This document shows, one piece after another, positions 16,117 to 43,852 of a stretch of 64,000 bases of DNA. Within the stretch, counting starts at the first letter, position 1; every line of letters starts with the position of its first letter. Both the position numbers and the translations under genes were made by a program. Below the pieces are notes generated by a model. That model worked only from the letters and a program-made list of their open reading frames with translations, made no database searches and had not been told where the DNA came from. The stretch lies in the IMG/VR virus record IMGVR_UViG_3300049793_000366, positions 372,001 to 436,000 of that record, one strand, 5' to 3'.

Positions 16117-16179
16117 ATGACTATTAAAAGAATTAAATTAGCTGATGATTGCCTAACCTGTCTAACTGTGACGGATTAG
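16117..16179 (+). CDS. Asp leader peptide MTIKRIKLADDCLTCLTVTD
   Basis: Short ORF after AATATATA, tandem GAT GAT codons, directly before a terminator and aspS. Confidence 0.75.
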   Translation: MTIKRIKLADDCLTCLTVTD

Positions 16180-16236
16180 TAATCTATTGACTATATAATT
16201 CGAAACCCAGTTAGACACGTTCTAACTGGGTTTTTT
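16159..16236 (+). promoter_or_regulatory. Attenuator (antiterminator/terminator) of aspS
   Basis: Terminator aaacccagttaga/tctaactgggttt + T tract (16203-16236); leader tgtctaactg (16159-16168) is the exact complement of cagttagaca (16208-16217). Confidence 0.8.
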
Positions 16237-16278
16237 ATTTGCACTAAAAATTATAAACTAAAAACAAAAACAATTATT

Positions 16279-17556
16279 ATGAAAAGAACAAACATCAATG
16301 AACTGAATGCCCATGTAGGTGAGACAGTTCTAATTAAAGGTTGGGTATCACAATTTAGAAAATTAAGTAAGATATCCTTTATTATTCTACGCGAGAGAAC
16401 AGGATATTGTCAAGTGATAGTACCAAAAGAAGTATTTTTCGAAACAATACATTCTGAATCAGTAGTAGAAATAGTTGGTACGGTTAAAGCTGAACCACAA
16501 TCTAAGTATAACGGTCTTGAGATTGTAGTAGAGAAGATAACTATTGTATCAAGCGCAGAAGTATTACCATTCCCAATCAGTAGAGAAGAAGGTGTACCAT
16601 TCAATACACTAAACACTTATCGACCATTGACACTGAGAAAAGAACAAGAGCGATGTATATTTAAAATACAGTCTGAAATTATTTGGGCATATAGAGAATA
16701 TCTTCGTTCACAAGGCTTCACTGAAATACAATCTACAAAACTATCTGCCGCTGGTTTAGAAGGTGGTTCAGAAATGTTTGAGATAAACTATTTTGGAGAG
16801 AAGATGTATCTAACACAAAGCCCGCAGTTCTATAAACAGATGATGGTTGGTGTATATGAACGAGTGTTTGAAGTTGGTAAAGTTTACAGAGCAGAAGGTT
16901 CTAATACAAACAAGCACTTAACAGAATTTGTTGGGTTTGAATTTGAAATGGGATTCATTGAATCAGTTGAAGAAGTAATGCAAATGGAAGAGAATGTACT
17001 TGAACACATATTCAATCATTTGAATGTAGTTTGTAAGTCTGAGCTATCACATTTATCAATTGAGTTGAAGTTTAATCCAATACCAAGAGTTACTTATTCA
17101 GAAGCTATTGAAATAATTAAACGTGAACATGGTATCACTTATGAGAAAGTAGGACTGAGTACCGAAGCTGAGAGATTGATTGGTGAATATATTCTGAAGA
17201 CACAAGGTTCAGAGTTTGTATTCATCACTAAATATCCATTATCAGAAAGACCATTCTATGCGATGCCATCACCAGAAGAAGGTATGTCTGAAACATTTGA
17301 ATTGCTTTATAAGGGGATGGAAATTACTTCTGGTGGTCAGCGCATTCATAACTATGAACAATTAGTTAAATCAATAGAAGCTAAGGGATTAAACCCAGAA
17401 GCATTTGAGAGCTACCTAATGGCATTTAAGTATGGTATGCCTACTCACGGAGGTATGGGTATCGGTGTAGAGCGAGTGCTTAAGCAAATGCTAAATTTGA
17501 ATACCGCAGAGGAAGCATCATTGATACCAAGAACTAAAGAGAGATACAGTCATTAA
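16279..17556 (+). CDS. aspS: Aspartyl-tRNA synthetase, short archaeal-type
   Basis: OB-fold N-terminus, QSPQFYKQ, YRAE, EITSGGQRIH, GMPTHGGMGIGVER. QSPQ favours AspRS over AsnRS. Confidence 0.88.
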   Translation: MKRTNINELNAHVGETVLIKGWVSQFRKLSKISFIILRERTGYCQVIVPKEVFFETIHSESVVEIVGTVKAEPQSKYNGLEIVVEKITIVSSAEVLPFPISREEGVPFNTLNTYRPLTLRKEQERCIFKIQSEIIWAYREYLRSQGFTEIQSTKLSAAGLEGGSEMFEINYFGEKMYLTQSPQFYKQMMVGVYERVFEVGKVYRAEGSNTNKHLTEFVGFEFEMGFIESVEEVMQMEENVLEHIFNHLNVVCKSELSHLSIELKFNPIPRVTYSEAIEIIKREHGITYEKVGLSTEAERLIGEYILKTQGSEFVFITKYPLSERPFYAMPSPEEGMSETFELLYKGMEITSGGQRIHNYEQLVKSIEAKGLNPEAFESYLMAFKYGMPTHGGMGIGVERVLKQMLNLNTAEEASLIPRTKERYSH

Positions 17557-19759: not shown

Positions 19760-19832
19760 GGAGCCATGGTTGAATGGTTACAATGCCACCCTGTCACGGT
19801 GAGCGATGCCGGTTCGAATCCGGTTGGTTCCG
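19760..19832 (+). tRNA. tRNA-Asp(GUC)
   Basis: Cloverleaf GGAGCCA/TGGTTCC, loop CTGTCAC, G73. Confidence 0.92.
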
Positions 19833-19910
19833 CAAAGTATCATAATCCAATCAAGAGTGTGGAGGATGAAGAGACCAATGCTTCTGTGGTTCTTATGATA
19901 CTAAAAATAC

Positions 19911-19984
19911 GACTCTGTAGCTCAGTTGGTTAGAGTGCCTGTTTGTCAAGCAGGAGGTCGCCGGTTCGAACCCGGTCATTGTCG
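19911..19984 (+). tRNA. tRNA-Asp(GUC), atypical body with two acceptor mismatches
   Basis: GACTCTG/CATTGTC, anticodon arm CCTGT-TTGTCAA-GCAGG. Confidence 0.75.
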
Positions 19985-19989
19985 CAAAA

Positions 19990-20063
19990 GGATCGTTAGT
20001 AGAGTTGGTTACAATGTCGCCCTGTCACGGCGAAGGTCACGGGTTCGAGTCCCGTACGGTCCG
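19990..20063 (+). tRNA. tRNA-Asp(GUC)
   Basis: GGATCGT/ACGGTCC, TCGCC-CTGTCAC-GGCGA. Confidence 0.92.
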
Positions 20064-20068
20064 CAAAT

Positions 20069-20139
20069 GTTTCGGTAGTTTAACTGGCTAGAATGGCCCC
20101 ATTCGGGGGTTGGTAGAGGTTCGAATCCTCTCTGAAACG
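20069..20139 (+). tRNA. tRNA-like RNA with a 5-nt anticodon loop (ATTCG); identity unassigned
   Basis: Intact acceptor GTTTCGG/CTGAAAC and T arm AGAGG-TTCGAAT-CCTCT; anticodon arm GCCCC-ATTCG-GGGGT. Confidence 0.55.
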
Positions 20140-20142
20140 CAA

Positions 20143-20393
20143 GAAAGTAGATGAGGTCATAGTGAGAGTGTACACTACTGTTATCTGGATGATAGCACTT
20201 CTGTATTAAAAAGACTCCGCTCTGAGTGGTTAGGTACCGTGTAGTATCTTCGCGTGTTCTCTGCTCGACAAAAGCAATGCCCAGTTGAAAGACTGTAAAA
20301 AAGCTGAGTCAGTGTATAAAGGGGAACGGGATATTAAAAGGTGTTAAACCTAAACTAAGTGGCTACACCGCACGGCTCAGCTCTCTACACTTC
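20143..20393 (+). ncRNA. Unidentified structured RNA, about 250 nt, between tRNAs
   Basis: Terminal pairing GAAAGTAGATGAG/CTCTCTACACTTC; GCTGAGTC/GGCTCAGC; several local hairpins; no ORF. Confidence 0.55.
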
Positions 20394-20466
20394 GGGATAT
20401 AGCGTAGTCCGGTATCGCGCCTGCTTTGGGAGCAGGAGGTCGTCAGTTCGAATCTGGCTATCCCGA
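20393..20466 (+). tRNA. tRNA-Pro(UGG)
   Basis: CGGGATA/TATCCCG, CCTGC-TTTGGGA-GCAGG. Confidence 0.92.
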
Positions 20467-20516
20467 CTGGAGCTTAGTTGTCAGTAGACTCGCGTTGGAA
20501 AGAGGAATTGTCAAAA

Positions 20517-20590
20517 CGAGATATAGCGTAGCCCGGTATCGCGCTTGCTTTGGGAGCAAGAGGCCGCAGGTTCGAATCCTGCTATCTCGA
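20517..20590 (+). tRNA. tRNA-Pro(UGG)
   Basis: CGAGATA/TATCTCG, CTTGC-TTTGGGA-GCAAG. Confidence 0.92.
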
Positions 20591-20594
20591 CAAA

Positions 20595-20813
20595 ATGAAA
20601 GTAGTTTGTGTAAATAATGGAAAAGAAACTAGAAGCGTCAATAATGACGTTACGGTTAATGATGTGTATGATGTTATATATGAACACACATCAGATTATT
20701 ACTTAACTAATGATAATAAAAAGAGACTCATGTACCCCAAAGATATGTTTATTACTTTGGATGAATTTAAAAAAGAAATTAGAAATAAAAAATTATTAAA
20801 TATAGGGTTATGA
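20595..20813 (+). CDS. Small hypothetical protein (true start ATG 20595; the ORF-track start lies in tRNA-Pro)
   Basis: MKVVCVNN...RNKKLLNIGL. Confidence 0.55.
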   Translation: MKVVCVNNGKETRSVNNDVTVNDVYDVIYEHTSDYYLTNDNKKRLMYPKDMFITLDEFKKEIRNKKLLNIGL

Positions 20814-21916
20814 GATTATCAGAAACAAAAATTTATAATATGTCAAGAGTTGGGAAAGATATTCTCTCAACATCTGAGTTGCTTGAGAAAGCAGGCTACA
20901 TTAAACAAGTTCAATCAGGATTATTTGTTCAGATGAATTTAATGAAACGTGTAGTGAACAACATTGAACGAATTGTAAAAGAAGAACTTGAAAAAATAAG
21001 TTGCTTAGAGATTGGATTAAACCAATTACAGAGCGCAGAAATTTGGAAACAAACAGGAAGATACGAAACATACGGATCTGAAATGTTTAAGTTGAAAGAC
21101 CGTTCAGATAAAGAAATGGTATTCACTGGTACGAATGAAGAGCTTGTAACCTTAGTGGCTAAGAATTATGTGAAGTCATATAGAGATTTATCTTTTACAT
21201 TCTATCAGATAAATAATAAGTTCCGTGATGAGATTAGATGCAACACTGGATTGATTAGATGTAAAGAGTTCTCAATGATGGATGCGTATTCATTTCACGA
21301 ATCAAAAGAACACTTACAAGCTTACTATGATAAGATGAGAGAATGTTACGTTAGAATCTTTGACAGACTTGGTTTGAAATACAGAATAGAATCTACTGAC
21401 TCAGGTGAGATTGGTGGTTCAGTATCAGAAGAGTTTGTAGTAACAACAAGTGATGGTGAAATAGAAGTTGGTCACATCTTCCAATTAGATACAAAGTATT
21501 CATCTAAGATGGAAGCAAGATTTGATGATAGAGAAGGTAAGAGTCAAGACATTGTTATGGGTTGTTACGGAATAGGTATCACTCGATTAGCACAAGTGTT
21601 AGCTGATGTTGGTAGAAGTGGTAACAACTTTAACTTTAGTGATGAAGTATCTGCTTATAAGTATGGTGTTGTAATCGCGAATGTTAATGACGAGAAACAA
21701 AAAGAAATTGGAGAAAAGATATACAAAAATTTGGTAGCTCAAGGATTATCCGTATATTTGGATGACCGAAACATAAGAATAGGTGAAAAGCTAAATGAAA
21801 TAGATGCTCTCGGTATTGCGAATAAAATATTAGTAGGTAAAAACATTGAAGAAAATATTTACGAAAAGAAAAAACTTTCCAGTGAGAATTGGATAAAAGA
21901 AGAAATAACATTATAA
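20810..21916 (+). CDS. proS: Prolyl-tRNA synthetase lacking the INS editing domain
   Basis: FRDEIR..GLIRCKEF.MMDAYSF; GEIGGSVSEEF joins IEVGHIFQL almost directly; MGCYGIGITR; C-terminal anticodon-binding domain. Confidence 0.92.
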   Translation: MRLSETKIYNMSRVGKDILSTSELLEKAGYIKQVQSGLFVQMNLMKRVVNNIERIVKEELEKISCLEIGLNQLQSAEIWKQTGRYETYGSEMFKLKDRSDKEMVFTGTNEELVTLVAKNYVKSYRDLSFTFYQINNKFRDEIRCNTGLIRCKEFSMMDAYSFHESKEHLQAYYDKMRECYVRIFDRLGLKYRIESTDSGEIGGSVSEEFVVTTSDGEIEVGHIFQLDTKYSSKMEARFDDREGKSQDIVMGCYGIGITRLAQVLADVGRSGNNFNFSDEVSAYKYGVVIANVNDEKQKEIGEKIYKNLVAQGLSVYLDDRNIRIGEKLNEIDALGIANKILVGKNIEENIYEKKKLSSENWIKEEITL

Positions 21917-21927
21917 TATATACAGCT

Positions 21928-21999
21928 ATGAACAATTTAGTACAACAAGTCCAGCAACAACAAATCAATCTGATGATTGACTGGACTCGTATTGGCTAA
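21928..21999 (+). CDS. Gln leader peptide MNNLVQQVQQQQINLMIDWTRIG
   Basis: Six Gln codons (5 CAA, 1 CAG) ahead of a terminator, four tRNA-Gln genes and glnS. Confidence 0.88.
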   Translation: MNNLVQQVQQQQINLMIDWTRIG

Positions 22000-22022
22000 A
22001 ATGTAATTAGTTCCAAATTTCG

Positions 22023-22057
22023 AAAACCCGTTAATCTGTGTGATTAACGGGTTTTTT
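22023..22057 (+). terminator. Attenuator terminator of the Gln operon
   Basis: aaaacccgttaatc/gattaacgggtttt + T tract; leader gattgac pairs with gttaatc. Confidence 0.85.
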
Positions 22058-22070
22058 GTTTGCCTAAAAT

Positions 22071-22151
22071 TGTCTGGTGGTGAAATGGCAGCCACATCCG
22101 CCTTTGAAGCGGATGCCGAAAGGCGTGTAGGTTCGACCCCTACCCAGACAG
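22071..22151 (+). tRNA. tRNA-Gln(UUG) with a long variable arm (type II body)
   Basis: TGTCTGG/CCAGACA, G73, TCCGC-CTTTGAA-GCGGA, variable arm GCC-GAAA-GGC. Confidence 0.8.
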
Positions 22152-22157
22152 CAACAT

Positions 22158-22230
22158 TGCGGAATCGTCTAACGGTTAGGATAACACCCTCTGAAGGTGT
22201 CTGGTGTGGGTTCGAATCCTACTTCCGCAA
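22158..22230 (+). tRNA. tRNA-Gln(CUG)
   Basis: TGCGGAA/TTCCGCA, ACACC-CTCTGAA-GGTGT. Confidence 0.88.
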
Positions 22231-22235
22231 CAAAT

Positions 22236-22309
22236 TGTTCTATGGTGTAACTGGTTAACACGTCCGACTTTGACTCGGAAGACTCTAGGTTCGAATCCTA
22301 GTAGAACAG
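22236..22309 (+). tRNA. tRNA-Gln(UUG)
   Basis: TGTTCTA/TAGAACA, TCCGA-CTTTGAC-TCGGA. Confidence 0.9.
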
Positions 22310-22318
22310 CTAAAATAT

Positions 22319-22389
22319 TCCTCTTTGGTCTAATGGTATGACGTTGGGTTTTGGTCCCAAAGGTGGTGGTTCGATTCCATCAAGAGGGA
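22319..22389 (+). tRNA. tRNA-Gln(UUG)
   Basis: TCCTCTT/AAGAGGG, TTGGG-TTTTGGT-CCCAA. Confidence 0.88.
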
Positions 22390-22420
22390 CAACAAATAGT
22401 AATAATTAAATACAAACAAT

Positions 22421-24040
22421 ATGAATTTCATTGAAGACAAAATAACAGAAAGGGGAATAATTGAAAGTTTTAAACTTCGTTTTCCACCAGAAAATAATGG
22501 CTTTTTACATATCGGTCATGCGAAATCTATATGCCTTAACTTTGGTTTAGCTGAAAAATATAACAGACCATGTAATTTAAGATTCGATGATACTAATCCA
22601 TCAAATGAATCAAATGAATTCACAGAGGCTATTAAGAGAGACATAGCATGGTTGGGTTATAGACCAGCTAATATTCATCACACATCAGACTACTTCGCAT
22701 TCCTATATGATTGTGCTAAGACATTAATCAGAAAAGGATTAGCATACGTTGATGATTCAACATCAGAAGAGATTGCGGCACTTAAAGGTACAACAACTTT
22801 AGCTGGTAGACCATCGCCTTATTACTCAAGAACAATCGAAGAGAATCTTGATTTGTTCGAGAGAATGAAGAACGGTGAATTCAATGAAGGTTCTAAAATA
22901 TTAAGAGCTAAGATTGACATGGCTTCTCCTAATATGATTTTGAGAGATCCTGTTTTATATCGTATCATCAACAAGACACACCACCACGTTGGTGATGCTT
23001 GGAAGATTTATCCAATGTATGACTTCGCTCACCCATTGTCTGACTTCATTGAAGGTATCACTGATTCACTTTGCACTTTAGAGTTCGAAGTACACAGACC
23101 ATTATATATGTGGGTACTTGAGAATTGTGATTTGAATGGTACATTACCAGAAGAAACAGAGTTCGCTCGTTTGAACATTGACTACACAGTTATGTCAAAG
23201 AGAAAGCTTAAGAGATTAGTTGAAGAGGGATTTGTTTCTGGTTGGGATGATCCAAGACTTCCAACAATTTCAGGTTTGAGAAGAAGAGGATATACACCAG
23301 CATCTATTAAAGATTTCTGTGATAGAATTGGTGTTACTCGTAAAGAGTCTGTTGTATCACACTTGTTACTTGAAGAGTGTTTAAGAAATGATTTAAACAA
23401 AGTAGCTAATCGTGTGATGGGTATAATGGATCCTGTTAAGTTAGTTATTACCAATTGGGATAACGGTACTGAAATGGTTGAGATTGAAAACAACCCAGAA
23501 GATGAAAGTGCTGGTAAGAGAATGGTTCCATTCAGTGGTGAAATATACATTGAACGTGAAGACTTCAGAGAAGAAGCTGATAACAAGTTTTTCCGATTGA
23601 AGCCAGGTTGTGAAGTAAGATTGAAGGGTGCTTGTGTAATCATGGCTAATGAAATTATCAAAGATTCAAATGGTAACATCATTGAAATCAGATGTACTTA
23701 TGACCCTAACAGTCGGTCAGGTATGACACTTGATAGAAAAGTTAAGGGTACTATTCACTGGGTATCAGTTGAACACGCTATTAAAGGAGAAGTTAAAGAG
23801 TACAGTAACTTATTCAATGTGGCTAATCCTGATGAGTTAGAAGACTTCGTAGAAGGATTGAACAAAGAGTCATTGATAGTTAATACGAATGCTTACTTTG
23901 AACCAGAAGCTTTGAATTGTTCAATCGATAAGCCAGTTCAAATGGTAAGAAAAGGTTACTATGTGATGGATAAAGATTCAACAACTAATTGCTTGATTTT
24001 CAATAAAACAGTTAATTTAAAAGAAGACCGTAATAAATGA
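22421..24040 (+). CDS. glnS: Glutaminyl-tRNA synthetase
   Basis: RFPPENNGFLHIGHAK, RFDDTNP, VMSKRKL, VKGTIHWVS. Confidence 0.95.
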   Translation: MNFIEDKITERGIIESFKLRFPPENNGFLHIGHAKSICLNFGLAEKYNRPCNLRFDDTNPSNESNEFTEAIKRDIAWLGYRPANIHHTSDYFAFLYDCAKTLIRKGLAYVDDSTSEEIAALKGTTTLAGRPSPYYSRTIEENLDLFERMKNGEFNEGSKILRAKIDMASPNMILRDPVLYRIINKTHHHVGDAWKIYPMYDFAHPLSDFIEGITDSLCTLEFEVHRPLYMWVLENCDLNGTLPEETEFARLNIDYTVMSKRKLKRLVEEGFVSGWDDPRLPTISGLRRRGYTPASIKDFCDRIGVTRKESVVSHLLLEECLRNDLNKVANRVMGIMDPVKLVITNWDNGTEMVEIENNPEDESAGKRMVPFSGEIYIEREDFREEADNKFFRLKPGCEVRLKGACVIMANEIIKDSNGNIIEIRCTYDPNSRSGMTLDRKVKGTIHWVSVEHAIKGEVKEYSNLFNVANPDELEDFVEGLNKESLIVNTNAYFEPEALNCSIDKPVQMVRKGYYVMDKDSTTNCLIFNKTVNLKEDRNK

Positions 24041-24543
24041 GTAATATATTAGATAAAATGTTTGATATGAATTTATCAGACTGTTTAGCAGCGTTAGTTA
24101 TCATAATAACATTCCTTACATTTATTATTAAAAAAACAAGGATAGGTTTTTTAAATTTTTGTTTATTTCTTTATAGAAAGGTTAAGTCTGTAATAGTTTT
24201 TATTCGTAGAAGTATAATATTATTTAGACTTCATAGGCTATTATCAAATTTGGATATTAATAGTGAATTTATAATTGATAAGGTTAAAATTAAAAAACAA
24301 ACACTCACAATATATAATGGTAAAAACAACATTGATATACATATTTCTAATAGTGACTTAGAAATGTTTTCTAAATATAAATTAAGTAAGTGGAAAAAAT
24401 CACTTCCACTTAGTATTTCACTATATATAGTAGATGGTATATTATTTAGAAATGAAGATGTATCTAAATTTACCAGAGAACATAGGCTATCTAAATATTT
24501 ACATGATTATATAAATGGAATAAAAACACCAAGTATTAATTAG
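24037..24543 (+). CDS. Hypothetical protein with N-terminal hydrophobic segment
   Basis: ATGA overlap with glnS. Confidence 0.5.
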   Translation: MSNILDKMFDMNLSDCLAALVIIITFLTFIIKKTRIGFLNFCLFLYRKVKSVIVFIRRSIILFRLHRLLSNLDINSEFIIDKVKIKKQTLTIYNGKNNIDIHISNSDLEMFSKYKLSKWKKSLPLSISLYIVDGILFRNEDVSKFTREHRLSKYLHDYINGIKTPSIN

Positions 24544-24544: not shown

Positions 24545-24601
24545 ATGAAACACATTAACTCAAATAACGTAGTCGTAGTCAACAGGAATCCCGTCTGTTA
24601 G
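24545..24601 (+). CDS. Val leader peptide MKHINSNNVVVVNRNPVC
   Basis: Four consecutive Val codons (GTA GTC GTA GTC) ahead of a terminator and valS. Confidence 0.88.
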   Translation: MKHINSNNVVVVNRNPVC

Positions 24602-24623
24602 GCTACGCTATATCTATTATACT

Positions 24624-24655
24624 AACCCATCAGACAATCTCTGATGGGTTTTTTT
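24624..24655 (+). terminator. Attenuator terminator of valS
   Basis: aacccatcag/ctgatgggtt + T tract; leader gtctg pairs with cagac. Confidence 0.82.
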
Positions 24656-24694
24656 ATACCAAAAAATTACTAAAAAATTAAAACTAAAAATATT

Positions 24695-26224
24695 ATGAAA
24701 ACGAAATACACACCCGAAATTGAAAATGAAATCAACCAAGAATGGTTAGAAAATAAAACATACAAATCAACACCTGATGAGAGAGAAGCATTCACTATCA
24801 TCATGCCACCACCAAACATCACTGGTATACTTCACCTTGGACACATCTTGAATAACACAATACAAGATATTTTCATTAGAAGAAAGAAACAACTTGGTTA
24901 CAACACTTGTTGGATTCCTGGTATCGACCATGCTTCAATCGCAACAGAAGCTAAAATCATTCACTGGTTGAAAGAACAGAACATCGAGAAGAATGATCTG
25001 ACTAAAGAACAATTTCTTGAGTATGCTTGGCAATGGAAAGATAAATATGGTAACATAATCATCGACCAACTTAAACGATGTGGCTTTGCTTGTGATTGGG
25101 ATAGACTTACATTCACAATGGATAAACATCACTCTGATAGAATCTATGAAATGTATGACAGACTTAAAGCTGGCAACATCATATATCGCGGTACTAAAAC
25201 AATGGCTTATGACCCATTAGCTAAAACATACTTATCAGACTCGGAAACGTTTGAGAAGAATGGTAAACTATTCTCTGAGAGAACAGGCGCTAAGATTGAA
25301 ATGAAAGACACTGAGCAGATATTTATCGATATGAATAAGATTGCTCAACCCGCACTTGATAGTATCGGAGAACGCATTAAAATGATTCCTGATACAGCAT
25401 TCCCATCTTATAAGAATTGGTTTGATAACTTACAAGATTGGTGTATCTCAAGACAGTTAACATGGGGTCACTCTATACCAGATGATGAAGGAACTTTTGA
25501 TACTTGGTTCTCTTCTTGGTTATGTGCTATCACAGCATTTAAATCACAAGAAGAAATAGATTACTATATGCCATCAGACTTCATCATTACTGGTCAAGAC
25601 ATCGCTTTCTTTTGGATTGCTAAGATGATAATGGCGAATGATTACTGGGATAAATCTATACCGTTTCATAACATCTACTTCACTGGTATTATGAGAGATA
25701 AAGACGGTAAGAAGTTTGCGAAGCAGTTTAATAATTCACCAGACATTATGAATTTGATGGAAGAGCATGGCGCTGACTCATTGCGATTCTCAACTATCAT
25801 TAACCATCACGCTGGTATGGATTCTAAATGGACTATGGATCAATTGTTACAGGGTAAAAGATTCTGTAATAAGATTTGGAATATCAACAAGCTAATGTCT
25901 TCGTGGCAACCATCTGATATAGAAATGTCAGACAAACAAAGAGAATCATTGAATACTTGGAAGATGCAGTTTGCTTCTGCTAAGAATAGCTACAAGCAAC
26001 TATTTGATGATGAGCTTAGATTCTCAGAAGCTTTGATATTAACCTACAATCTTATTTGGGAAGACTTTTCATCTGGGTTACTTGAAGCCATAAAGCCTGA
26101 ACAGGGCATTTGGCCAAATTTAAACCGTGAGCTGTATGATTGTTTAATGAGTGATTTCAGAGAATTGATGCTAATGTTGGAGCCATTTATGCCATTCATA
26201 AGCAATTATATGTTGAATAAGTAA
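24695..26224 (+). CDS. valS: Valyl-tRNA synthetase, 509 aa, CP1 editing domain deleted
   Basis: PPPNITGILHLGH, PGIDHASIAT, DWCISRQLTWGH, FDTWFSS; KMSKS equivalent is KFAKQ. Confidence 0.9.
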   Translation: MKTKYTPEIENEINQEWLENKTYKSTPDEREAFTIIMPPPNITGILHLGHILNNTIQDIFIRRKKQLGYNTCWIPGIDHASIATEAKIIHWLKEQNIEKNDLTKEQFLEYAWQWKDKYGNIIIDQLKRCGFACDWDRLTFTMDKHHSDRIYEMYDRLKAGNIIYRGTKTMAYDPLAKTYLSDSETFEKNGKLFSERTGAKIEMKDTEQIFIDMNKIAQPALDSIGERIKMIPDTAFPSYKNWFDNLQDWCISRQLTWGHSIPDDEGTFDTWFSSWLCAITAFKSQEEIDYYMPSDFIITGQDIAFFWIAKMIMANDYWDKSIPFHNIYFTGIMRDKDGKKFAKQFNNSPDIMNLMEEHGADSLRFSTIINHHAGMDSKWTMDQLLQGKRFCNKIWNINKLMSSWQPSDIEMSDKQRESLNTWKMQFASAKNSYKQLFDDELRFSEALILTYNLIWEDFSSGLLEAIKPEQGIWPNLNRELYDCLMSDFRELMLMLEPFMPFISNYMLNK

Positions 26225-26234: not shown

Positions 26235-26615
26235 ATGAAACATCTTAAGAAGTTTAACGAGAATATATTCTCTGATAGAGGCGAATACATAAGAGCTACA
26301 TTAACTGAGCTTGTAGATGATATTGATGCTGAATTAACTTACTCTGATAAGGGTAGTGATGAGTATTATAAGGTTACTTATAAGATACCAACTGATGGGA
26401 TAAACTTCACAGGTAGTATGCTTGTTCCAGATATAAACAAGATTATTGAGTTTAATAATCTAAACAATAGAATAGCTATTGCTTTTAAGAAAGCATTATT
26501 GAAATTAAATGCTGATAATATTTTAGGGTTATTTGATATTACTCATCATCATACACATTATGAATATGATTTATGTGCTTATGTTAAAGTAAAAGAAGAA
26601 AATGAAGTATCTTAG
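26235..26615 (+). CDS. Hypothetical protein, MKHLKKFNE N-terminus
   Basis: AATATATA upstream. Confidence 0.6.
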   Translation: MKHLKKFNENIFSDRGEYIRATLTELVDDIDAELTYSDKGSDEYYKVTYKIPTDGINFTGSMLVPDINKIIEFNNLNNRIAIAFKKALLKLNADNILGLFDITHHHTHYEYDLCAYVKVKEENEVS

Positions 26616-27471
26616 ATTATACGAAGCATCACATAGAGACGCTAAATTACAAGAGCTTATAAGTGCTTTTGAGTATAACCGTAATTGGGAACCAGTAAGT
26701 GGTGCCGAATATCCAGATACCGTAAAAGCATTCGTTCATAAGTTAAATAGTAATTTCATAGTAAAGGTTTTATTCAGAAAGAGTAGTCAGGATTTAACAA
26801 CGGTGAATTGTTATTTATATGATGTGAAGGATGATTCTATGTCGTACTTGGATAATGTTGAAGACCCACATATCACAGCAAATAGATATCTAAGAGGTAT
26901 TGGTAATTCATATGGTAGAGAATCTTATAATCCTCTTGAAATACCAGATTGGTGCGTCAAGATAGCTGAGAAGCAAATGGAATACTATAAAGTATTAAAT
27001 AAGTTTCCATCAGAAGAAGAGATGAATAGCTTCATTGAAGAGCTTATTGATTTTAGATTTGCTAAACCATTAAATGAGTTTGATTTGATTGACTTGAAGT
27101 TTGGTTATATTGATTATAGTTTTCCTAAAGATATATGGGATGATAATGTTTATTATCACAAAGACAATAAATCAACAAGAGAGCCGCTTTATGTCGCTTA
27201 TTTGGAATCAAGTACAGCCGCGTATGATATCTATGTGAAATACAGAGATGAGTTTAAATCTGGTAAAGACTATTGTGATAAAGTGAAGCAGTGCTTAACT
27301 GAATGCTTTGAAATTGCTAAGAAGAAAATATCTGCTATTTATGGGTTTGAAGCCAATATATTTACATCAACTGATTTTGATGAGCATAATCTTGAACAGC
27401 TACAAAGATTAATGGATAGTGGTGAGTATGGTAGAAATTACAGAATAATTATTACATTCAAATTAAAATAA
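26602..27471 (+). CDS. Hypothetical protein, MKYLRLYEA N-terminus
   Basis: 289 aa coupled ORF. Confidence 0.6.
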   Translation: MKYLRLYEASHRDAKLQELISAFEYNRNWEPVSGAEYPDTVKAFVHKLNSNFIVKVLFRKSSQDLTTVNCYLYDVKDDSMSYLDNVEDPHITANRYLRGIGNSYGRESYNPLEIPDWCVKIAEKQMEYYKVLNKFPSEEEMNSFIEELIDFRFAKPLNEFDLIDLKFGYIDYSFPKDIWDDNVYYHKDNKSTREPLYVAYLESSTAAYDIYVKYRDEFKSGKDYCDKVKQCLTECFEIAKKKISAIYGFEANIFTSTDFDEHNLEQLQRLMDSGEYGRNYRIIITFKLK

Positions 27472-27499
27472 AAAGAGCGAGATAATTCTCGCTCTTTTA
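27471..27499. terminator. Bidirectional intrinsic terminator
   Basis: aaaaagagcgaga-taat-tctcgctctttt between convergent genes. Confidence 0.8.
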
Positions 27500-27877
27500 C
27501 TATCTTGGAAAACCAATTCCTCTATTACCAGTTGATATTTTAAAATTACCTGGTTTGAATAGTTCTAAGATATACTTCTGACACAATTCGGTATCAAAAG
27601 GTTTACAGGAGAACACGTCAATGAAAGTCCAACCCTTATCTTCAAATGAATGTACAGAAATATGGCTCTCTGCGATGATAACTATACCAGTTATCCCTTT
27701 GTCTTCTGGAACTAACCCAGCATACGGAAACACATAAGGTTGTGTGATTGGTGTCATACCAATCATCTCAGGCATCTCTTTTAGAAATTTAAAGTGCAAA
27801 TCATAGTTTGCTAAGACTTCCTTAGGGCAATCCCATAGGTCAATCATAATGTGAGGTCCAAATACTTCTTCGTTCAT
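27500..27877 (-). CDS. speD: S-adenosylmethionine decarboxylase proenzyme
   Basis: GPHIMIDLWDC; IIAESHISVH (E-S autocleavage site); IDVFSCKPFD. Confidence 0.9.
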   Translation of the reverse strand: MNEEVFGPHIMIDLWDCPKEVLANYDLHFKFLKEMPEMIGMTPITQPYVFPYAGLVPEDKGITGIVIIAESHISVHSFEDKGWTFIDVFSCKPFDTELCQKYILELFKPGNFKISTGNRGIGFPR

Positions 27878-35697: not shown

Positions 35698-35771
35698 TGA
35701 GGGGTAGCTCAGTGGTAAGAGCGCCGGGACGGAAAACCCGGAGGTCGTTGGTTCGAATCTAACCCCCTCTA
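35698..35771 (+). tRNA. Initiator-like tRNA body with an 8-nt anticodon loop ACGGAAAA
   Basis: U1-U72 mismatch, GAGGGG/CCCCTC, CCGGG/CCCGG stem, AGGTC variable loop. Confidence 0.6.
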
Positions 35772-35779
35772 CAAAGAAT

Positions 35780-36767: not shown

Positions 36768-36840
36768 AATTCCGTAGCTCAATTGGTGGAGCGTCTGACT
36801 TTTAATCAGAAGGTTGTGGGTTCAAGTCCCATCGGGATTA
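36768..36840 (+). tRNA. tRNA-Lys(UUU)
   Basis: AATTCCG/CGGGATT, TCTGA-CTTTTAA-TCAGA. Confidence 0.9.
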
Positions 36841-36870
36841 CAAAAAAATAAAATATTAAAAATAAAAACG

Positions 36871-36903
36871 ATGAAAACTATAAAACGAAAATATAAACGG
36901 TAA
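36871..36903 (+). CDS. Lys-rich mini-ORF MKTIKRKYKR
   Basis: ATG..TAA directly abutting a hairpin before tRNA-Lys. Confidence 0.5.
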   Translation: MKTIKRKYKR

Positions 36904-36937
36904 GACGTGGTTCGCCTTGAGCTACGTCACCGAAAAT

Positions 36938-37012
36938 GACTCTGTAGCTTAATGGCGAAGCACTCGGCTTTTAACCGAGGGATTGTGGGTTCGAGTCCCA
37001 CCAGGGTCACCA
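36938..37012 (+). tRNA. tRNA-Lys(UUU), CCA encoded
   Basis: GACTCTG/CAGGGTC, CTCGG-CTTTTAA-CCGAG. Confidence 0.92.
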
Positions 37013-37014
37013 AA

Positions 37015-37098
37015 GCGTCTGTCGCTCAGTGGCCGAGAGCATCAGTCTTTTAAACTGAAGGAGCAATCCCATCGTTGGTTCGAATCCAACCAGACGCA
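37015..37098 (+). tRNA. tRNA-Lys(UUU) with a long variable arm (type II body)
   Basis: GCGTCTG/CAGACGC, TCAGT-CTTTTAA-ACTGA, variable arm GGA-GCAA-TCC. Confidence 0.8.
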
Positions 37099-37121
37099 CT
37101 AAACTAAAAAAGAAAGTGCAA

Positions 37122-38324
37122 ATGGAAACAGTAAATTGTAGAATACTAAACAGAAGACTTCACGGAAAGTCTGCGTTCTTAGATGTGTTAGCGAATGGTC
37201 AACATTTACAAACATATCTTAACATAAATGAAGTTGAGAACTTCACTGAGTTGACAGAATTACCAATAGGTTCTTTCATTAGAATTAACGGGGAATACTT
37301 CACAACCAGAACTGGTCACTACACGTTGAGAATAGATAATGCTCATGTATTATTTATACCTAACAGAATACTACCAGTAGTTCAAGACGATGGTGAGAAT
37401 AGATTCAATGAAGTAACAAACGTTGAATCTATTAGAAGAAGAAGATACCTTCAAACGATATTGAATGCTGAGGAAAGGCAAACATTCGTTACAAGGTCAA
37501 GAGTTATAAATACAATAAGGAATTTCTTTATACAAAGAGATTACTTAGAAGTAGAAACTCCAATCTTACAACCAGTTTACGGTGGTGCTGAAGCTACACC
37601 ATTCGTAACAAGATTCGAATCACTTGATTCAGACTTCTATCTAAGGATAGCACCTGAATTATATTTGAGAAGAATGATAATTGGTGGGTATGATAGGGTG
37701 TTTGAGATTGGTAGAAACTTTAGAAATGAAGGACTATCTAACAGACATAACCCGGAGTTTACTTTCATTGAGGTGTATACCGCATTTGAAAATTATAACT
37801 TTAGTATGGATGTAGTAACTGAATTGTTTACAGAAATATTCAATCAGTTCGGTGAAGTTGAGTATCAGGGTAACAGAATTAATTTCTCTAACATAGAGAG
37901 AAGAAGTTACACTGAGTTAGTAGCTCAACACTGTAATGTTGATACCACAACATTAACAGATAATGAATTGGTAGCGTTGTTTGAAAATGAAGTTGAAGGT
38001 AATTTAATTAACCCAACTATTGTATATGATTACCCAGCTAGTGTAAGTCCTTTAGCGCAAGTTAGAGAAGATAACCCAAGCATAGCTGAACGTTTTGAAA
38101 TATATGTTGGTGGAATGGAAATTGGAAATGCATACTCTGAGTTGAACGATGTGAATAGACACATCGAGAACATTGGAACAGAAGATGCAGACTTCGTAGA
38201 GGCACTCGAATATGGAATGCCACCTACAACAGGAATAGGACTCGGTATAGATAGAATTGTAATGATTCTTACAAACCGAGCAATAAGAGACGTTATATTC
38301 TTCCCAGCGATGAGAAGAGCATAA
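37122..38324 (+). CDS. lysS: Lysyl-tRNA synthetase class II, shortened
   Basis: YGGAEATPF, YLRIAPELYL, FRNEG..RHNPEF, RFEIYVGGMEIGNAYSELND, YGMPPTTGIGLGIDR. Confidence 0.93.
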   Translation: METVNCRILNRRLHGKSAFLDVLANGQHLQTYLNINEVENFTELTELPIGSFIRINGEYFTTRTGHYTLRIDNAHVLFIPNRILPVVQDDGENRFNEVTNVESIRRRRYLQTILNAEERQTFVTRSRVINTIRNFFIQRDYLEVETPILQPVYGGAEATPFVTRFESLDSDFYLRIAPELYLRRMIIGGYDRVFEIGRNFRNEGLSNRHNPEFTFIEVYTAFENYNFSMDVVTELFTEIFNQFGEVEYQGNRINFSNIERRSYTELVAQHCNVDTTTLTDNELVALFENEVEGNLINPTIVYDYPASVSPLAQVREDNPSIAERFEIYVGGMEIGNAYSELNDVNRHIENIGTEDADFVEALEYGMPPTTGIGLGIDRIVMILTNRAIRDVIFFPAMRRA

Positions 38325-38642: not shown

Positions 38643-39383
38643 ATGGAATGTAATGTGTGTAGTAAATCTTTTAAAACCGAAAGTGGTTTTAAGAGCCATA
38701 CTAAGAAGTCATGTGATAAACATATAAATAAATGTAGAAATAAAAATTGCCCAAAGTGTGGTTTTAAGATAGCAAATAAAATAGAAAGTCACATAAACAT
38801 ATGTGATGGGTCTGGACCAAGAAGATTAAAAAAAAGAAGAGAAGGTGGGCATCAGTGGGCGAAGGGTAAAACATATGAAGAGCTTTTTGGAAAAGAGAAA
38901 GCACAAGAACGTATAGAAGAGCTTAAATTAAATTATAAAGAAAACCCAATCATTATAGATGATGATGTGGAACAAGAGAGAAGGAATAAGATAAGAATAA
39001 AGATAATTGAACGCTATGCTAATGGTTGGGAATCTACTGCTGGTCGATGTAAGAAGATTTCATATTTTAGTAATGTAGCAGGTAACATTAAAGTAGATGG
39101 TACTTGGGAATTATCAGTAGCAAAATACTTAGATAGCTTAGGTGTAAATTGGATTAGAAATAAAAAACGATTTAAATATTTCAACTCTATTAAAAATAGA
39201 ACATCAACTTATTGTCCTGATTTTTATGTAGAAGAATGGGGTTGTTTTATAGAAGTGAAGGGATATAAAACAGAACTCGATGATATAAAATGGGCAAACT
39301 TTAAAGACAAATTGGAAATTTGGGATAAAGATAAGTTAACGAGTTTAGGAATAGATATAAGATATAAAAAGAAAAGAGTATGA
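38643..39383 (+). mobile_element. Putative homing endonuclease, PD-(D/E)xK type with zinc-finger N-terminus
   Basis: YCPDFYV..WGCFIEVKGY; KGKTYEELFG repeat-like segment. Confidence 0.72.
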
Positions 39384-40292: not shown

Positions 40293-40379
40293 GGAAGAGT
40301 AAAGCGTAATTGGTATCGCCCCAGTCTTGAAAACTGGTATCGGGAAACTGGTGTGCAGGTTCGAGTCCTGTCTCTTCCG
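40293..40379 (+). tRNA. tRNA-Ser(UGA)
   Basis: GGAAGAG/CTCTTCC, CCAGT-CTTGAAA-ACTGG, long variable arm. Confidence 0.92.
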
Positions 40380-40384
40380 CAAAT

Positions 40385-40456: not shown

Positions 40457-40462
40457 CAATAA

Positions 40463-40552: not shown

Positions 40553-40561
40553 TATTAATTA

Positions 40562-40646: not shown

Positions 40647-40651
40647 CAAAT

Positions 40652-43055: not shown

Positions 43056-43124
43056 ATGAAAACATTAAACATCAATACTCATTTTCACTTTCACTTCGAA
43101 AACCTCGAACTGGGAGTCCATTGA
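43056..43124 (+). CDS. His/Phe leader peptide MKTLNINTHFHFHFENLELGVH
   Basis: HFHFHF directly before a terminator, hisS and pheS. Confidence 0.9.
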   Translation: MKTLNINTHFHFHFENLELGVH

Positions 43125-43151
43125 TATTGATATAACTATATAATCATTATG

Positions 43152-43179
43152 AAGCCCAGACGAGAATCTGGGCTTTTTT
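43152..43179 (+). terminator. Attenuator terminator of hisS-pheS
   Basis: aagcccaga/tctgggctt + T tract; leader ctcgaactggg pairs with cccagacgag. Confidence 0.85.
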
Positions 43180-43216
43180 ATTTGCAAAAATTTAAACAAA
43201 ATAAAACAAAGAAATC

Positions 43217-43852
43217 ATGGAAATTAAATTAGAATCAACTTACAAAGGAACAAGAATACTATTCGCTGAAACTGCGAAAACAAAAAGAACAATCATTAAC
43301 AAGATGATTGAAATACTTGAATCATATGGCTATCAAGAAATGATGATACCAATTATTCAAAAGCAAGATACTTTTAAATCTAAAGTAGGTGCTGAAAACC
43401 AAAAGATGATGTACACCTTCAAAGATATGGGTGACAGAGATTTGTGTTTAGCACCAGAGTATACCGCGGTTATTCAACAACTTGCTAAAGAAAAGTTTAA
43501 ATTCAACAAAGATGTTAAGCTATTTTATGTAGCTGAGTGTTTCAGAGGTGAGAACACACAAGCTGGTCGATTTAGACAGTTCACTCAATTTGGTGTTGAG
43601 GTGATAAACCCAAGAGAAGACTACTCTGATGAAATGTTAGAGATAGCAAAAAAGTTAATTGAAATATGTACTGATAACTATGAAGTGAATACTGACGCGA
43701 CCAGAGGCTTAGACTACTATAAAGGTGGTAAGGGCTTCGAGATTGGTTGCCCAGAGTTGGGATCCTCTAAGCAAGTATGTGGTGGTGGTTCTTATGAAGG
43801 TGGTATCGGATTCGCTATCGGTGTTGACCGAATACTAATACTTAAAAAATAA
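43217..43852 (+). CDS. hisS: Histidyl-tRNA synthetase, catalytic domain only (211 aa)
   Basis: LCLAPEYT, FRGENTQAGRFRQFTQFGVE, RGLDYY, GGGSY, GFAIGVDR, then stop. Confidence 0.88.
   Translation: MEIKLESTYKGTRILFAETAKTKRTIINKMIEILESYGYQEMMIPIIQKQDTFKSKVGAENQKMMYTFKDMGDRDLCLAPEYTAVIQQLAKEKFKFNKDVKLFYVAECFRGENTQAGRFRQFTQFGVEVINPREDYSDEMLEIAKKLIEICTDNYEVNTDATRGLDYYKGGKGFEIGCPELGSSKQVCGGGSYEGGIGFAIGVDRILILKK

What the first reader, a model, noticed from the sequence alone, without database searches (positions are those of the whole stretch)
24545..24655. Val attenuator for an editing-deficient ValRS
GTA GTC GTA GTC run; 1:2 helix cgtagtc-aacag/ctgtt-ggctacg; terminator 24624-24655. No tRNA-Val lies in this window, so this module would sense host or distal phage tRNA-Val charging.
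Basis: partly seen in the sequence, partly recalled or inferred. Interest (0 to 1): 0.68.

Follow-up and report, generated by a model that had tools for sequence, protein, structure and literature searches.

The report
Valine attenuator controlling phage ValRS
A tiny valine-rich reading frame with switchable RNA hairpins lies just before a giant phage's own valyl-tRNA synthetase gene and most likely turns it on only when charged valine tRNA runs short; it is one of at least five amino-acid-matched switches in this phage, and I found no report of such regulation for virus-encoded synthetases.

Summary
An 18-codon ORF (24545-24601, MKHINSNNVVVVNRNPVC*) carries GTA GTC GTA GTC. These codons form the 5' arm of a 17-bp hairpin (24569-24611). 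A canonical intrinsic terminator (24624-24650, T-tract to 24655) lies 40 nt before a 509-aa ValRS that lacks the CP1 editing domain.

GUCUG (24593-24597), next to the leader stop codon, pairs with CAGAC in the terminator's 5' arm. Folding with a ribosome footprint gives the classical logic: a stall at Val gives the antiterminator, and a ribosome at the stop gives the terminator.

Nine further Val leaders of the same architecture precede short ValRS genes in other huge-phage contigs, including the published LR745206. They show synonymous Val-codon changes and rebuilt stems. Eighty Bacteroidota valS loci have none.

The same genome carries cognate leaders before IleRS (IIII), LeuRS (LLLL), a tRNA-Gln array plus GlnRS (QQ.QQQQ) and a HisRS-like gene (HFHFH).

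Three tRNA-Val genes exist about 51 kb before the window.

Verdict: a genuine ribosome-mediated transcription attenuator. The mechanism is classical, but the viral synthetase-network context appears undescribed. There is no expression data.

The parts
24037..24543 (+). Upstream ORF of 168 aa with no Pfam hit. Its TAG stop (24541-24543) lies 1 nt before the leader ATG. No promoter-like element separates it from the leader, so in this copy the leader is probably transcribed with the GlnRS operon and translated by coupling or re-initiation.
   Evidence: In L003 the leader starts at a GTG that overlaps the upstream TGA.
24545..24601 (+). Leader peptide ORF: 18 codons plus TAG, MKHINSNNVVVVNRNPVC*.
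   Evidence: The homologous peptides in nine other loci are listed in the full report.
24569..24580 (+). Regulatory codons GTA GTC GTA GTC (Val x4), with a fifth Val codon GTC at 24593-24595. GTC is the rarest Val codon of the genome (4% of Val codons).
   Evidence: Homologues show synonymous variation while always keeping Val.
24569..24611 (+). The 1:2 hairpin: 17 bp, two bulges, 7-nt loop, about -18 kcal/mol. Its 5' arm is the Val codons. Its 3' arm contains the stop codon and region 2. It acts as the anti-antiterminator.
24593..24602 (+). Region 2 core (GUCUGUUAGG), overlapping the last two sense codons and the TAG stop. GUCUG pairs with CAGAC at 24631-24635 to form the antiterminator.
   Evidence: duplex -9.2 kcal/mol, shuffle p = 0.02. 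It is masked when a ribosome sits on the stop codon.
24624..24650 (+). Intrinsic terminator stem-loop (regions 3 and 4): 11 bp, loop CAAUC, -15.9 kcal/mol.
24649..24655 (+). T7 tract of the terminator.
24656..24694 (+). A-rich 5' UTR of valS. It has no TAnnTTTG motif, and one search lists no sigma-70-like hexamer pair lying wholly between the terminator and the ATG. valS therefore depends on read-through.
24695..26224 (+). ValRS of 509 aa. The HIGH motif is HLGH and the KMSKS motif is KFAKQ. The protein lacks the CP1 editing domain and the C-terminal ~170 residues.
   Evidence: aligned to T. thermophilus ValRS 1GAX as 8-196/11-201, 195-262/345-413 and 261-505/446-689.
21928..22057 (+). Sister module in the same operon. 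The Gln leader MNNLVQQVQQQQINLMIDWTRIG* spans 21928-21999 and its terminator spans 22025-22051 plus a T-run. It is followed by four tRNA-Gln genes (22071-22390) and GlnRS (22421-24040).
   Evidence: It is conserved in LR745206, LR756502 and 6 of 8 IMG/VR GlnRS loci.
43056..43852 (+). Sister module. The His leader MKTLNINTHFHFHFENLELGVH* spans 43056-43124, its terminator spans 43152-43173, and the HisRS-like 211-aa gene spans 43217-43852.

Best explanation
This is a ribosome-mediated (leader-peptide) transcription attenuator that controls the phage's own valS.

Proposed mechanism:
- RNA polymerase arrives from the tRNA-Gln/GlnRS operon and transcribes the leader.
- A ribosome translates the 18-codon ORF.
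- When Val-tRNA(Val) is plentiful, the ribosome runs to the TAG stop. There it covers region 2 (GUCUGUUAGG). The terminator hairpin (24624-24650 plus U7) forms and transcription stops 40 nt before valS.
- With no ribosome at all, the 1:2 hairpin locks region 2 away and the result is the same.
- When charged tRNA(Val) is scarce, the ribosome stalls on GUA GUC GUA GUC. This melts the 1:2 hairpin but leaves region 2 free. Region 2 pairs with the 5' arm of the terminator before the 3' arm is made, and polymerase reads through into valS.

The result is a feedback loop: poor valine charging leads to more phage ValRS.

Shown here: the sequence elements, their mutually exclusive pairings, their geometry, their conservation, and the cognate pattern across five synthetases.

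Inferred: that the leader is translated, that transcription and translation are coupled in the (probably Bacteroidota) host, and that termination actually responds to charging.
For: 1. All four regions exist at the right spacing. A footprint of -15 to +12 nt around the A site was applied. A stall on Val gives the antiterminator in the nascent RNA. A ribosome on the stop gives only the terminator.

2. Ten loci carry the same architecture in front of short, CP1-less ValRS genes.
- Type-1 ValRS, 49-94% identical to the window protein: window, L003, L004, L006, L010.
- A different, PRK13208-type ValRS only ~26% identical: L156 in published LR745206, L196, L201, L204, L205.
- The Val run is kept through synonymous changes: GTA GTC GTA GTC; GTA GTC GTT GTC; GTG GTG GTC; GTA GTG GTC GTT; GTC GTA GTC; GTG GTT GTC.
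- The 1:2, 2:3 and 3:4 stems are rebuilt from different sequences.

3. Region 2 to region 3 complementarity beats shuffles in every copy (p = 0.02 to 0.0005). Fisher's combined p is 7e-14 over nine leaders, with the near-duplicate L003 left out.

4. Region 2 always overlaps or abuts the leader stop codon.

5. The same genome has cognate leader-plus-terminator modules before other synthetases.
- ileS: IIII (ileS match 695 bits, above the cut-off).
- leuS: LLLL.
- four tRNA-Gln genes plus glnS: QQ.QQQQ.
- a hisS-like gene: HFHFH.
Sources. The Ile and Gln modules recur in other huge phages.

6. Negative controls.
- None of 80 Bacteroidota valS upstream regions has such a leader.
- None of 46 distant viral ValRS-like loci has one.
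- Thirteen pattern hits elsewhere precede unrelated genes or no long ORF, never a ValRS.

7. No promoter-like motif lies between the terminator and valS.

8. Three of the five leader Val codons are GTC, which makes up 4% of genomic Val codons. Rare regulatory codons are a known way of sharpening attenuators (own knowledge of the E. coli leu leader).
Against: - No expression data exist. No RNA run holds this DNA.
- In the window copy the antiterminator is weak: a 5-bp core and -9.2 kcal/mol. It ranks only 21st of 147 when the same score is computed for every terminator in the genome.
- The leader has no Shine-Dalgarno sequence and, in this copy, no promoter of its own.
- Transcription-translation coupling has not been shown for the presumed host phylum.
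- The module is dispensable. L007, L008 (a tRNA-Val/Ala array sits upstream instead), L009, L200, L202 and L203 have short ValRS genes without it.
- The shuffle p-values treat related sequences as independent.
- Column-wise covariation could not be computed because the leaders are too divergent to align.
Confidence: 0.85

Rival explanations
1. An ordinary operon-end terminator for the GlnRS/ORF168 transcript, with a chance short ORF and an unrelated hairpin. valS would then be transcribed from its own promoter.
For: The terminator is canonical and lies just after a gene. The TAnnTTTG promoter motif is not statistically enriched, so promoters are hard to exclude.
Against: - The Val-run ORF, hairpin and terminator recur before ValRS in nine other loci, several with their own promoter-like TAnnTTTG upstream of the leader rather than of valS.
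- Four other synthetases in the same genome have leaders rich in their own amino acid.
- No promoter-like sequence lies between the terminator and valS.
Confidence: 0.02
2. A real attenuator whose signal is not Val-tRNA charging. It might sense general translation capacity, or ValRS or another protein might bind the 1:2 hairpin (autoregulation in the manner of E. coli thrS).
For: The large 1:2 hairpin is conserved and could be a protein site. Any slowing of the leading ribosome would favour read-through (inference).
Against: - The only feature shared by all ten leaders, apart from the architecture, is the Val run itself, kept through synonymous changes.
- The sister modules swap in exactly the cognate amino acid.
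- The hairpin loop (GAAUCCC/AAUCCCG) holds no Val anticodon, and loop sequences differ between homologues.
Confidence: 0.07
3. A T-box-like or other direct RNA sensor of uncharged tRNA or of valine, with the ORF irrelevant.
For: T-boxes are the usual synthetase attenuators in Firmicutes (Naville and Gautheret 2010, PMC2965389).
Against: - No Rfam family matches the element, even at E <= 5.
- The element is about 110 nt, too small for a T-box.
- No specifier or T-box sequence is conserved.
- The three-base periodicity of GTN GTN GTN is what is conserved.
Confidence: 0.02
4. A timing switch through stop-codon suppression. The phage's tRNA(CUA) would read the leader's TAG, and the ribosome would run on to TAA 24623-24625 at the foot of the terminator. 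That would block the terminator and turn valS on once the suppressor is expressed. This could act on top of valine sensing.
For: - A tRNA with anticodon CUA lies at genome 121630-121702.
- Four of the ten Val leaders end in TAG.
- The next in-frame stop in the window is TAA 24623-24625.
Against: - ORF statistics give no sign of TAG recoding.
- The other Val leaders end in TAA or TGA, and the Ile, Leu and Gln leaders end in TAA.
- This idea does not explain the Val run.
Confidence: 0.04

Closest known systems
E. coli pheST attenuator (pheM leader peptide)
   Same: [quoted passage not shown] It gives tRNA-charging-dependent feedback on synthetase synthesis (Fayat 1983, Springer 1985 and Mechulam 1987, as cited in PMC4082710).
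   Different: - It is chromosomal and proteobacterial, and senses Phe rather than Val.
- It is a single case in its genome.
- The element here is viral, is probably expressed in Bacteroidota, and is one of at least five cognate modules.
- One of those modules (Gln) controls a tRNA array as well as the enzyme.
E. coli ilvGMEDA and ilvBN leaders; trp, his and leu leaders (classical four-region attenuators)
   Same: They share the four-region logic: regulatory codons in region 1, the stop codon placed so that a terminating ribosome blocks region 2, a 2:3 antiterminator and a 3:4 terminator. The ilv leaders also use Val codons, and the leu leader uses rare codons (own knowledge; modelling in PMC1183508, listed).
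   Different: Those leaders control amino-acid biosynthesis operons, so they sense supply in order to make more amino acid. Here the output is the charging enzyme. No sequence similarity was found, and no Rfam leader family matches.
Predicted His leader before hisS paralogue/hisZ in bacilli (Naville and Gautheret 2010)
   Same: It is a cognate leader peptide in front of a synthetase-family gene, found by terminator-centred comparative genomics (PMC2965389). This phage also has a His leader before a HisRS-like fragment.
   Different: That case is bacterial, limited to a single amino acid, and sits in a phylum where T-boxes dominate.
T-box riboswitches
   Same: They perform the same physiological task: raising synthetase transcription when the cognate tRNA is uncharged, through a terminator/antiterminator choice.
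   Different: T-boxes bind tRNA directly and need no translation. No T-box match is present here, and the sensor is a translated ORF.
Bacteroid-trp motif (RF01692)
   Same: It is a candidate cis-regulatory leader in Bacteroidetes (PMC2864571). From my own knowledge it is read as a Trp leader-peptide attenuator, which would show that the presumed host phylum can use this mechanism.
   Different: It is a host biosynthetic operon with a different amino acid. It was not detected in the window.

Membership tests
Ribosome-mediated (leader-peptide) transcription attenuator | A short ORF with tandem regulatory codons cognate to the controlled gene. | tested here: met
   The 18-codon ORF has four consecutive Val codons plus a fifth, in front of valS. 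The pattern is conserved in nine other loci.
Ribosome-mediated (leader-peptide) transcription attenuator | An intrinsic terminator between the leader ORF and the structural gene, with no promoter after it. | tested here: met
   An 11-bp GC-rich stem plus T7 at 24624-24655 lies 40 nt before the ATG. No TAnnTTTG motif, and no sigma-70-like hexamer pair lying wholly within 24656-24694, was found. The absence of a promoter rests on motif scans only.
Ribosome-mediated (leader-peptide) transcription attenuator | An antiterminator (2:3) that is mutually exclusive with the terminator (3:4). | tested here: met
   GUCUG pairs with CAGAC, giving -9.2 kcal/mol and shuffle p = 0.02 in the window. Homologues reach 8-11 bp and -10.5 to -16.2 kcal/mol. 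The combined p is 7e-14. Caveat: the window copy ranks only 21st of 147 against other terminators in the genome.
Ribosome-mediated (leader-peptide) transcription attenuator | A 1:2 hairpin that contains the regulatory codons and sequesters region 2. | tested here: met
   The 17-bp hairpin at 24569-24611 has the Val codons as its 5' arm. In most homologues it is present with a different sequence.
Ribosome-mediated (leader-peptide) transcription attenuator | Geometry: a ribosome at the stop codon masks region 2, and a ribosome stalled at the regulatory codons leaves it free. | tested here: met
   Footprint-constrained folding was run for all ten Val leaders. Region 2 starts 13 nt after the last codon of the Val run and overlaps the stop codon.
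Ribosome-mediated (leader-peptide) transcription attenuator | The leader is translated, and read-through rises when the cognate charged tRNA falls. | not testable with these tools
   No RNA runs hold this DNA. A reporter assay or in vitro coupled assay is needed.
T-box riboswitch | Conserved Stem I with a specifier loop, and the T-box sequence in the antiterminator. | tested here: not met
   No Rfam match at gathering score or at E <= 5.
Valyl-tRNA synthetase (class Ia) | A Rossmann catalytic core with HIGH and KMSKS motifs, and best similarity to valS models. | tested here: met
   Pfam tRNA-synt_1 matches at 4e-87. The best NCBIfam hit is valS NF004349 at 471 bits, below its 704-bit cut-off because the protein is truncated. 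The motifs are HLGH and KFAKQ (host-type KMSKQ).
Valyl-tRNA synthetase (class Ia) | A CP1 editing domain that clears Thr-tRNA(Val). | tested here: not met
   The alignment to 1GAX skips residues 202-344, and the alignment to Bacteroidales ValRS P0038 skips residues 202-347. All nine sequences of alignment A1 (the window protein and its eight closest relatives) are 499-545 aa.

The most novel reading that the evidence does not exclude
The Val module may be one node of a phage-autonomous charging-homeostasis network. At least five leader attenuators (Val, Ile, Leu, Gln, His) each report the charging of one amino acid's tRNAs and switch on a minimal, editing-less phage synthetase only on demand. 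For Gln the phage's own tRNA array is switched on too.

The leaders mix codons that are the exact Watson-Crick partners of the phage's own isoacceptors. For Val these are GTA for anticodon UAC and GTC for GAC, and GTC is otherwise almost unused. For Ile they are ATT and ATA, for GAU and UAU. For Gln they are CAA and CAG, for UUG and CUG. The network may therefore monitor the phage's private tRNA pool rather than the host's. That would be a virus-encoded sensor of translational supply.
Probability: 0.3. Interest if true: 0.85.

Novelty: new variant of a known kind. Interest (0 to 1): 0.75.

Why it matters
Huge phages carry up to about 15 synthetases and dozens of tRNAs (Al-Shayeb 2020, PMC7162821). 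How, or whether, these genes are regulated has not been addressed in the literature I could search.

If these attenuators work as read here, a virus measures the charging state of individual amino-acid tRNA pools during infection. It would deploy its own charging enzymes amino acid by amino acid, rather than expressing them constitutively.

- This gives a testable answer to why phages carry synthetases: as on-demand back-up when host charging fails or is attacked.
- It extends leader-peptide attenuation to viruses and to valS, ileS, leuS and glnS.
- It offers compact, amino-acid-specific sensors for Bacteroidota.
- It may explain how editing-less, potentially error-prone synthetases are tolerated: they would be made only when needed.

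Tried and rejected
- **Alternative genetic code.** A tRNA(CUA) exists. Making TAG a sense codon barely lengthens ORFs (51 to 53 ORFs over 500 aa), and TAG ends 102 of 741 ORFs. The standard code was kept.
- **tRNA or known RNA family at the site.** ARAGORN and Rfam found none, at gathering score or at E <= 5.
- **Repeat or mobile element.** The 401-nt region has no second copy in the genome.
- **Host origin of the leader.** No comparable Val leader was found in 80 Bacteroidota valS loci.
- **Close relatives in IMG/VR by exact peptides.** None were found. A profile search gave 46 distant ValRS-like loci without leaders.
- **Degenerate DNA pattern for leader + T-run + ATG.** There were 0 hits in viral contigs. 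There were 14 hits in metagenome contigs, of which only the already known L006 contig is real.
- **Column-wise covariation.** The MAFFT alignment of six leaders does not keep the stems in register. I used per-sequence folding and shuffles instead, and built no covariance model.
- **Expression evidence.** Only three DNA-type runs hold the stretch and none is RNA.
- **Promoter assignment by TAnnTTTG.** The motif is not enriched in the window (77 found against 88 expected). Promoter statements are therefore only observations.
- **Asp leader before AspRS (window 16279).** A terminator with strong alternative pairing exists, but there is no convincing Asp run. It was not counted.
- **The genome search 'relatives'.** This is not available for virus records.

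Full report
**Setting.** The window is bases 372001-436000 of a 507,910-bp IMG/VR virus record with 33% G+C.
- Its nearest DNA relatives in GenBank are the 634-kb and 642-kb 'uncultured phage' genomes LR745206 and LR756502. These belong to the huge-phage set of Al-Shayeb et al. 2020, whose >634-kb members were predicted to infect Bacteroidetes (PMC7162821).
- The closest full-length relatives of the ValRS studied here come from Bacteroidales, Rikenellaceae and Flavobacteriales.
- The genome carries 62 tRNA genes and a tmRNA, and about 15 synthetase genes.
- The window alone holds 39 tRNAs. It also holds AspRS, ProRS, GlnRS, ValRS, LysRS, a TrpRS-like gene, SerRS, a HisRS-like gene, one further class IIa gene and TyrRS, all on the + strand.
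- ORF statistics show the standard genetic code.

**The observation.**
- An ATG at 24545 lies 1 nt after the TAG stop of a 168-aa ORF. It opens an 18-codon frame, MKHINSNNVVVVNRNPVC, that ends at TAG 24599-24601.
- The four consecutive Val codons GTA GTC GTA GTC lie at 24569-24580.
- RNAfold places these codons in the 5' arm of a 17-bp hairpin (24569-24611).
- An 11-bp terminator stem follows (24624-24650), with a T7 tract ending at 24655.
- The region's energy is 5.7 standard deviations below that of its shuffles.
- The next gene starts at 24695.

**The gene under control.**
- The 509-aa product has the class Ia catalytic domain and part of the anticodon-binding domain.
- Its best family match is valS, below the cut-off because it matches in three separate pieces.
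- Against T. thermophilus ValRS (1GAX) it aligns as 8-196/11-201, 195-262/345-413 and 261-505/446-689. The CP1 editing domain (about residues 202-344) and the C-terminal ~170 residues are therefore missing. A Bacteroidales ValRS shows the same gap.
- HIGH is HLGH. KMSKS is KFAKQ, against KMSKQ in Bacteroidota.
- 'Editing-deficient ValRS' is therefore a fair description.
- Eight database proteins of 499-545 aa form a family with it at 49-94% identity.

**The missing piece: the antiterminator.**
- GUCUG (24593-24597) covers the last two sense codons of the leader and abuts the stop. It is complementary to CAGAC (24631-24635) in the 5' arm of the terminator.
- I folded the nascent RNA with a ribosome footprint of -15 to +12 nt around the A site.
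- With the A site on any Val codon, the 1:2 hairpin is melted. Region 2 then pairs with region 3 (-8.2 to -8.8 kcal/mol) before the 3' arm of the terminator exists.
- With the A site on the stop codon, region 2 is buried in the ribosome and only the terminator can form.
- With no ribosome, both 1:2 and 3:4 form.
- This is the classical four-region logic.
- In this copy the 2:3 duplex is modest: -9.2 kcal/mol and p = 0.02 against shuffles. It ranks only 21st of 147 when the same score is computed for every terminator in the genome.

**Comparative evidence for the Val leader.** I fetched the contigs that encode the family members.

Four of the seven family members whose contigs came with DNA (P0004's did not) carry a leader, hairpin and terminator at the same place:
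- L003 (94% ValRS identity): ..NIVVVVNRTPVC*, starting at a GTG that overlaps the upstream TGA.
- L004 (70%): MKQILNNNVVVNARCRVW*.
- L006 (68%): MNLNNVVVVNTRCRIWY*.
- L010 (49%): MKSKYSTNMVVVASIG*.

A second lineage of short, CP1-less ValRS has the same device. This lineage is of the PRK13208 type and only ~26% identical to the window protein.
- L156 in published LR745206: MKTINLNNLVVVNVSV*.
- L196 in a complete 518,809-bp phage: ..LNVVVAHFLQVVQPDYI*.
- L201: MKFNQNIVVVNVSV*.
- L204: MNINLNIVVVSTSVRCW*.
- L205, a degenerate copy: ..LNTVIVTTRV*.

Three patterns hold across these ten leaders:
- The Val run is preserved through synonymous changes.
- The stems are rebuilt from different sequences. 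The antiterminator, for example, is UCUGGUAG/UUACCAGA in L004, AUCUGGUA/UACCAGAU in L006, and an 11-bp CUGAUAUGUUG/CGACAUAUCAA type in L156 and L201.
- Region 2 always overlaps or abuts the stop codon.

The 2:3 complementarity beats shuffles in every copy (p = 0.033 to 0.0005). Fisher's combined p is 7e-14 over nine copies, with L003 left out as a near-duplicate. Some of these sequences are related, so the number overstates independence.

Six short-ValRS loci lack the device: L007, L008, L009, L200, L202 and L203. In L008 an array of three tRNA-Val and two tRNA-Ala genes sits upstream instead.

**Controls.**
- None of 80 Bacteroidota valS upstream regions has a comparable leader.
- None of 46 more distant viral ValRS-like loci has one.
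- A degenerate DNA pattern for 'NN-VVV ... T-run ... ATGAAAA' found 14 metagenome hits. Only the known L006 contig precedes a ValRS.
- Rfam has no match to the element.

**The decisive context: a set of cognate leaders.** I scanned the whole genome for short ORFs that contain a run of one amino acid and end within 70 nt of an intrinsic terminator. The top of the list contained:
- MNFNSIIIIRKSTPWYKPIG*, 44 nt before a 742-aa ileS (695 bits, above the cut-off).
- MNTNLLLLADS*, 31 nt before a 421-aa leuS-type gene.
- MNNLVQQVQQQQINLMIDWTRIG* (window 21928-21999), before four tRNA-Gln genes and glnS.
- The Val leader.

Inspection of every synthetase upstream region added MKTLNINTHFHFHFENLELGVH* before a hisS-like 211-aa gene (window 43056-43852).

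Each of these modules shows a stall-dependent 2:3 pairing. The individual p values are 0.02-0.11 and the combined p is 0.001.

The Ile and Gln leaders recur elsewhere:
- In LR745206 and LR756502.
- In IMG/VR contigs of 344-519 kb: Ile leaders in 3 IleRS loci and Gln leaders in 6 of 8 GlnRS loci.

Four or five independent matches between the repeated amino acid and the identity of the next synthetase cannot reasonably be chance.

**Mechanism and its status.** The best reading is ribosome-mediated transcription attenuation of valS by Val-tRNA(Val) availability. This is the same principle as the E. coli pheST attenuator (references in PMC4082710).
- Shown: the elements, their exclusivity, their geometry, their conservation and the cognate pattern.
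- Inferred: translation of the leader, coupling of the leading ribosome to RNA polymerase in the host, and the physiological response.

In the window (and in L003) the leader has no promoter of its own and abuts the preceding ORF. The Val attenuator is therefore probably an internal checkpoint of a longer transcript: Gln leader, tRNA-Gln x4, GlnRS, ORF168, Val leader, ValRS. In L004 a TAnnTTTG (Bacteroidota -7 type) motif lies before the small ORF upstream of the leader. In L006, L156, L201, L204 and L205, and in the Ile and Leu modules, one lies a few nt to about 50 nt upstream of the leader ATG. That motif is not enriched overall.

**Which tRNAs are sensed.** The genome has three, with anticodons UAC, UAC and GAC, at genome 321105-321592.
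- The leader alternates GTA and GTC, the exact partners of those anticodons.
- GTC makes up only 4% of Val codons in 253 long ORFs, and the commonest codon, GTT (52%), is not used in the leader.
- This may reflect stem constraints, a rare-codon sensitising effect, or sensing of the phage's own isoacceptors. I cannot separate these possibilities.

**Novelty.** The mechanism is textbook. Cognate leaders before synthetase genes are known for pheST and predicted for a hisS paralogue in bacilli (PMC2965389). I found no report of leader-peptide attenuators in any phage, or of regulation of phage-encoded synthetases, in the searchable library. That is not proof of absence. I rate this a new variant of a known kind. 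The surprise lies in the viral context and in the multi-amino-acid network, which is also present in already published genomes.

**Limits.**
- There are no transcript or ribosome data.
- The window's own antiterminator is weak.
- Host identity is inferred.
- Covariation could only be assessed sequence by sequence.

Noticed in passing
window 60855-61269 (+), with a tRNA at 61277-61350: A full-length GOLLD RNA (RF02032, 232 bits, E = 1e-64) lies directly upstream of a tRNA gene.
   Followed up: no
window 35698-35772 (+): A tRNA-like gene with a four-base anticodon (ggaa) according to ARAGORN. Rfam scores it as a tRNA at 53.6 bits. It lies inside a His/Lys/Trp/Phe tRNA array, and its anticodon resembles that of the neighbouring tRNA-Phe (gaa) genes. 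It may be a frameshift-type or degenerate tRNA.
   Followed up: no
genome 121630-121702 and 59956-60348 (outside the window): An amber-suppressor-type tRNA (anticodon CUA) and a tmRNA (tag AKSKTTATQVEELEIA) are present. ORF statistics nevertheless show no TAG recoding. In the window, read-through of the leader's TAG would end at TAA 24623-24625, at the foot of the terminator.
   Followed up: partly
window 19760-24040, 36768-38321, 40293-42279: There are cognate tRNA-array-then-synthetase modules on one strand: tRNA-Pro x2 then ProRS; tRNA-Gln x4 then GlnRS; tRNA-Lys x3 then LysRS; a tRNA-Ser/Arg array then SerRS. In L008 a tRNA-Val/Ala array precedes the ValRS in place of a leader.
   Followed up: partly
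window 20810-21916, 24695-26224, 39380-40102, 43217-43852; genome 128103-129368: Many of the phage synthetases are minimal: ProRS 368 aa, ValRS 509 aa, LeuRS 421 aa, TrpRS-like 240 aa and HisRS-like 211 aa. They match their family models in separate pieces or only in part, which suggests loss of editing or accessory domains.
   Followed up: partly
window about 16117-16279 (genome terminator at 388204): AspRS (window 16279-17556) is preceded by a strong terminator (-16.8 kcal/mol). Its upstream alternative pairing (-14.3 kcal/mol) ranks 5th of 147. The only short ORF there, MTIKRIKLADDCLTCLTVTD*, has no clear Asp run, so it may be an attenuator of another kind.
   Followed up: partly
genome-wide, e.g. 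window 21917-21925 and genome 51609, 370880, 482271: The motif TATATACA[AG] lies 1-3 nt before the ATG of about ten genes, including the Ile and Gln leaders. Versions of it precede the Ile leader of L155 and the Val leaders of L004 and L201. It may be a phage start-site or promoter element.
   Followed up: partly
window 27471-27498: A palindromic hairpin flanked by an A-run and a T-run lies between the convergent genes 26602-27471 (+) and 27500-27877 (-). It is a likely bidirectional terminator that closes the ValRS transcription unit.
   Followed up: no
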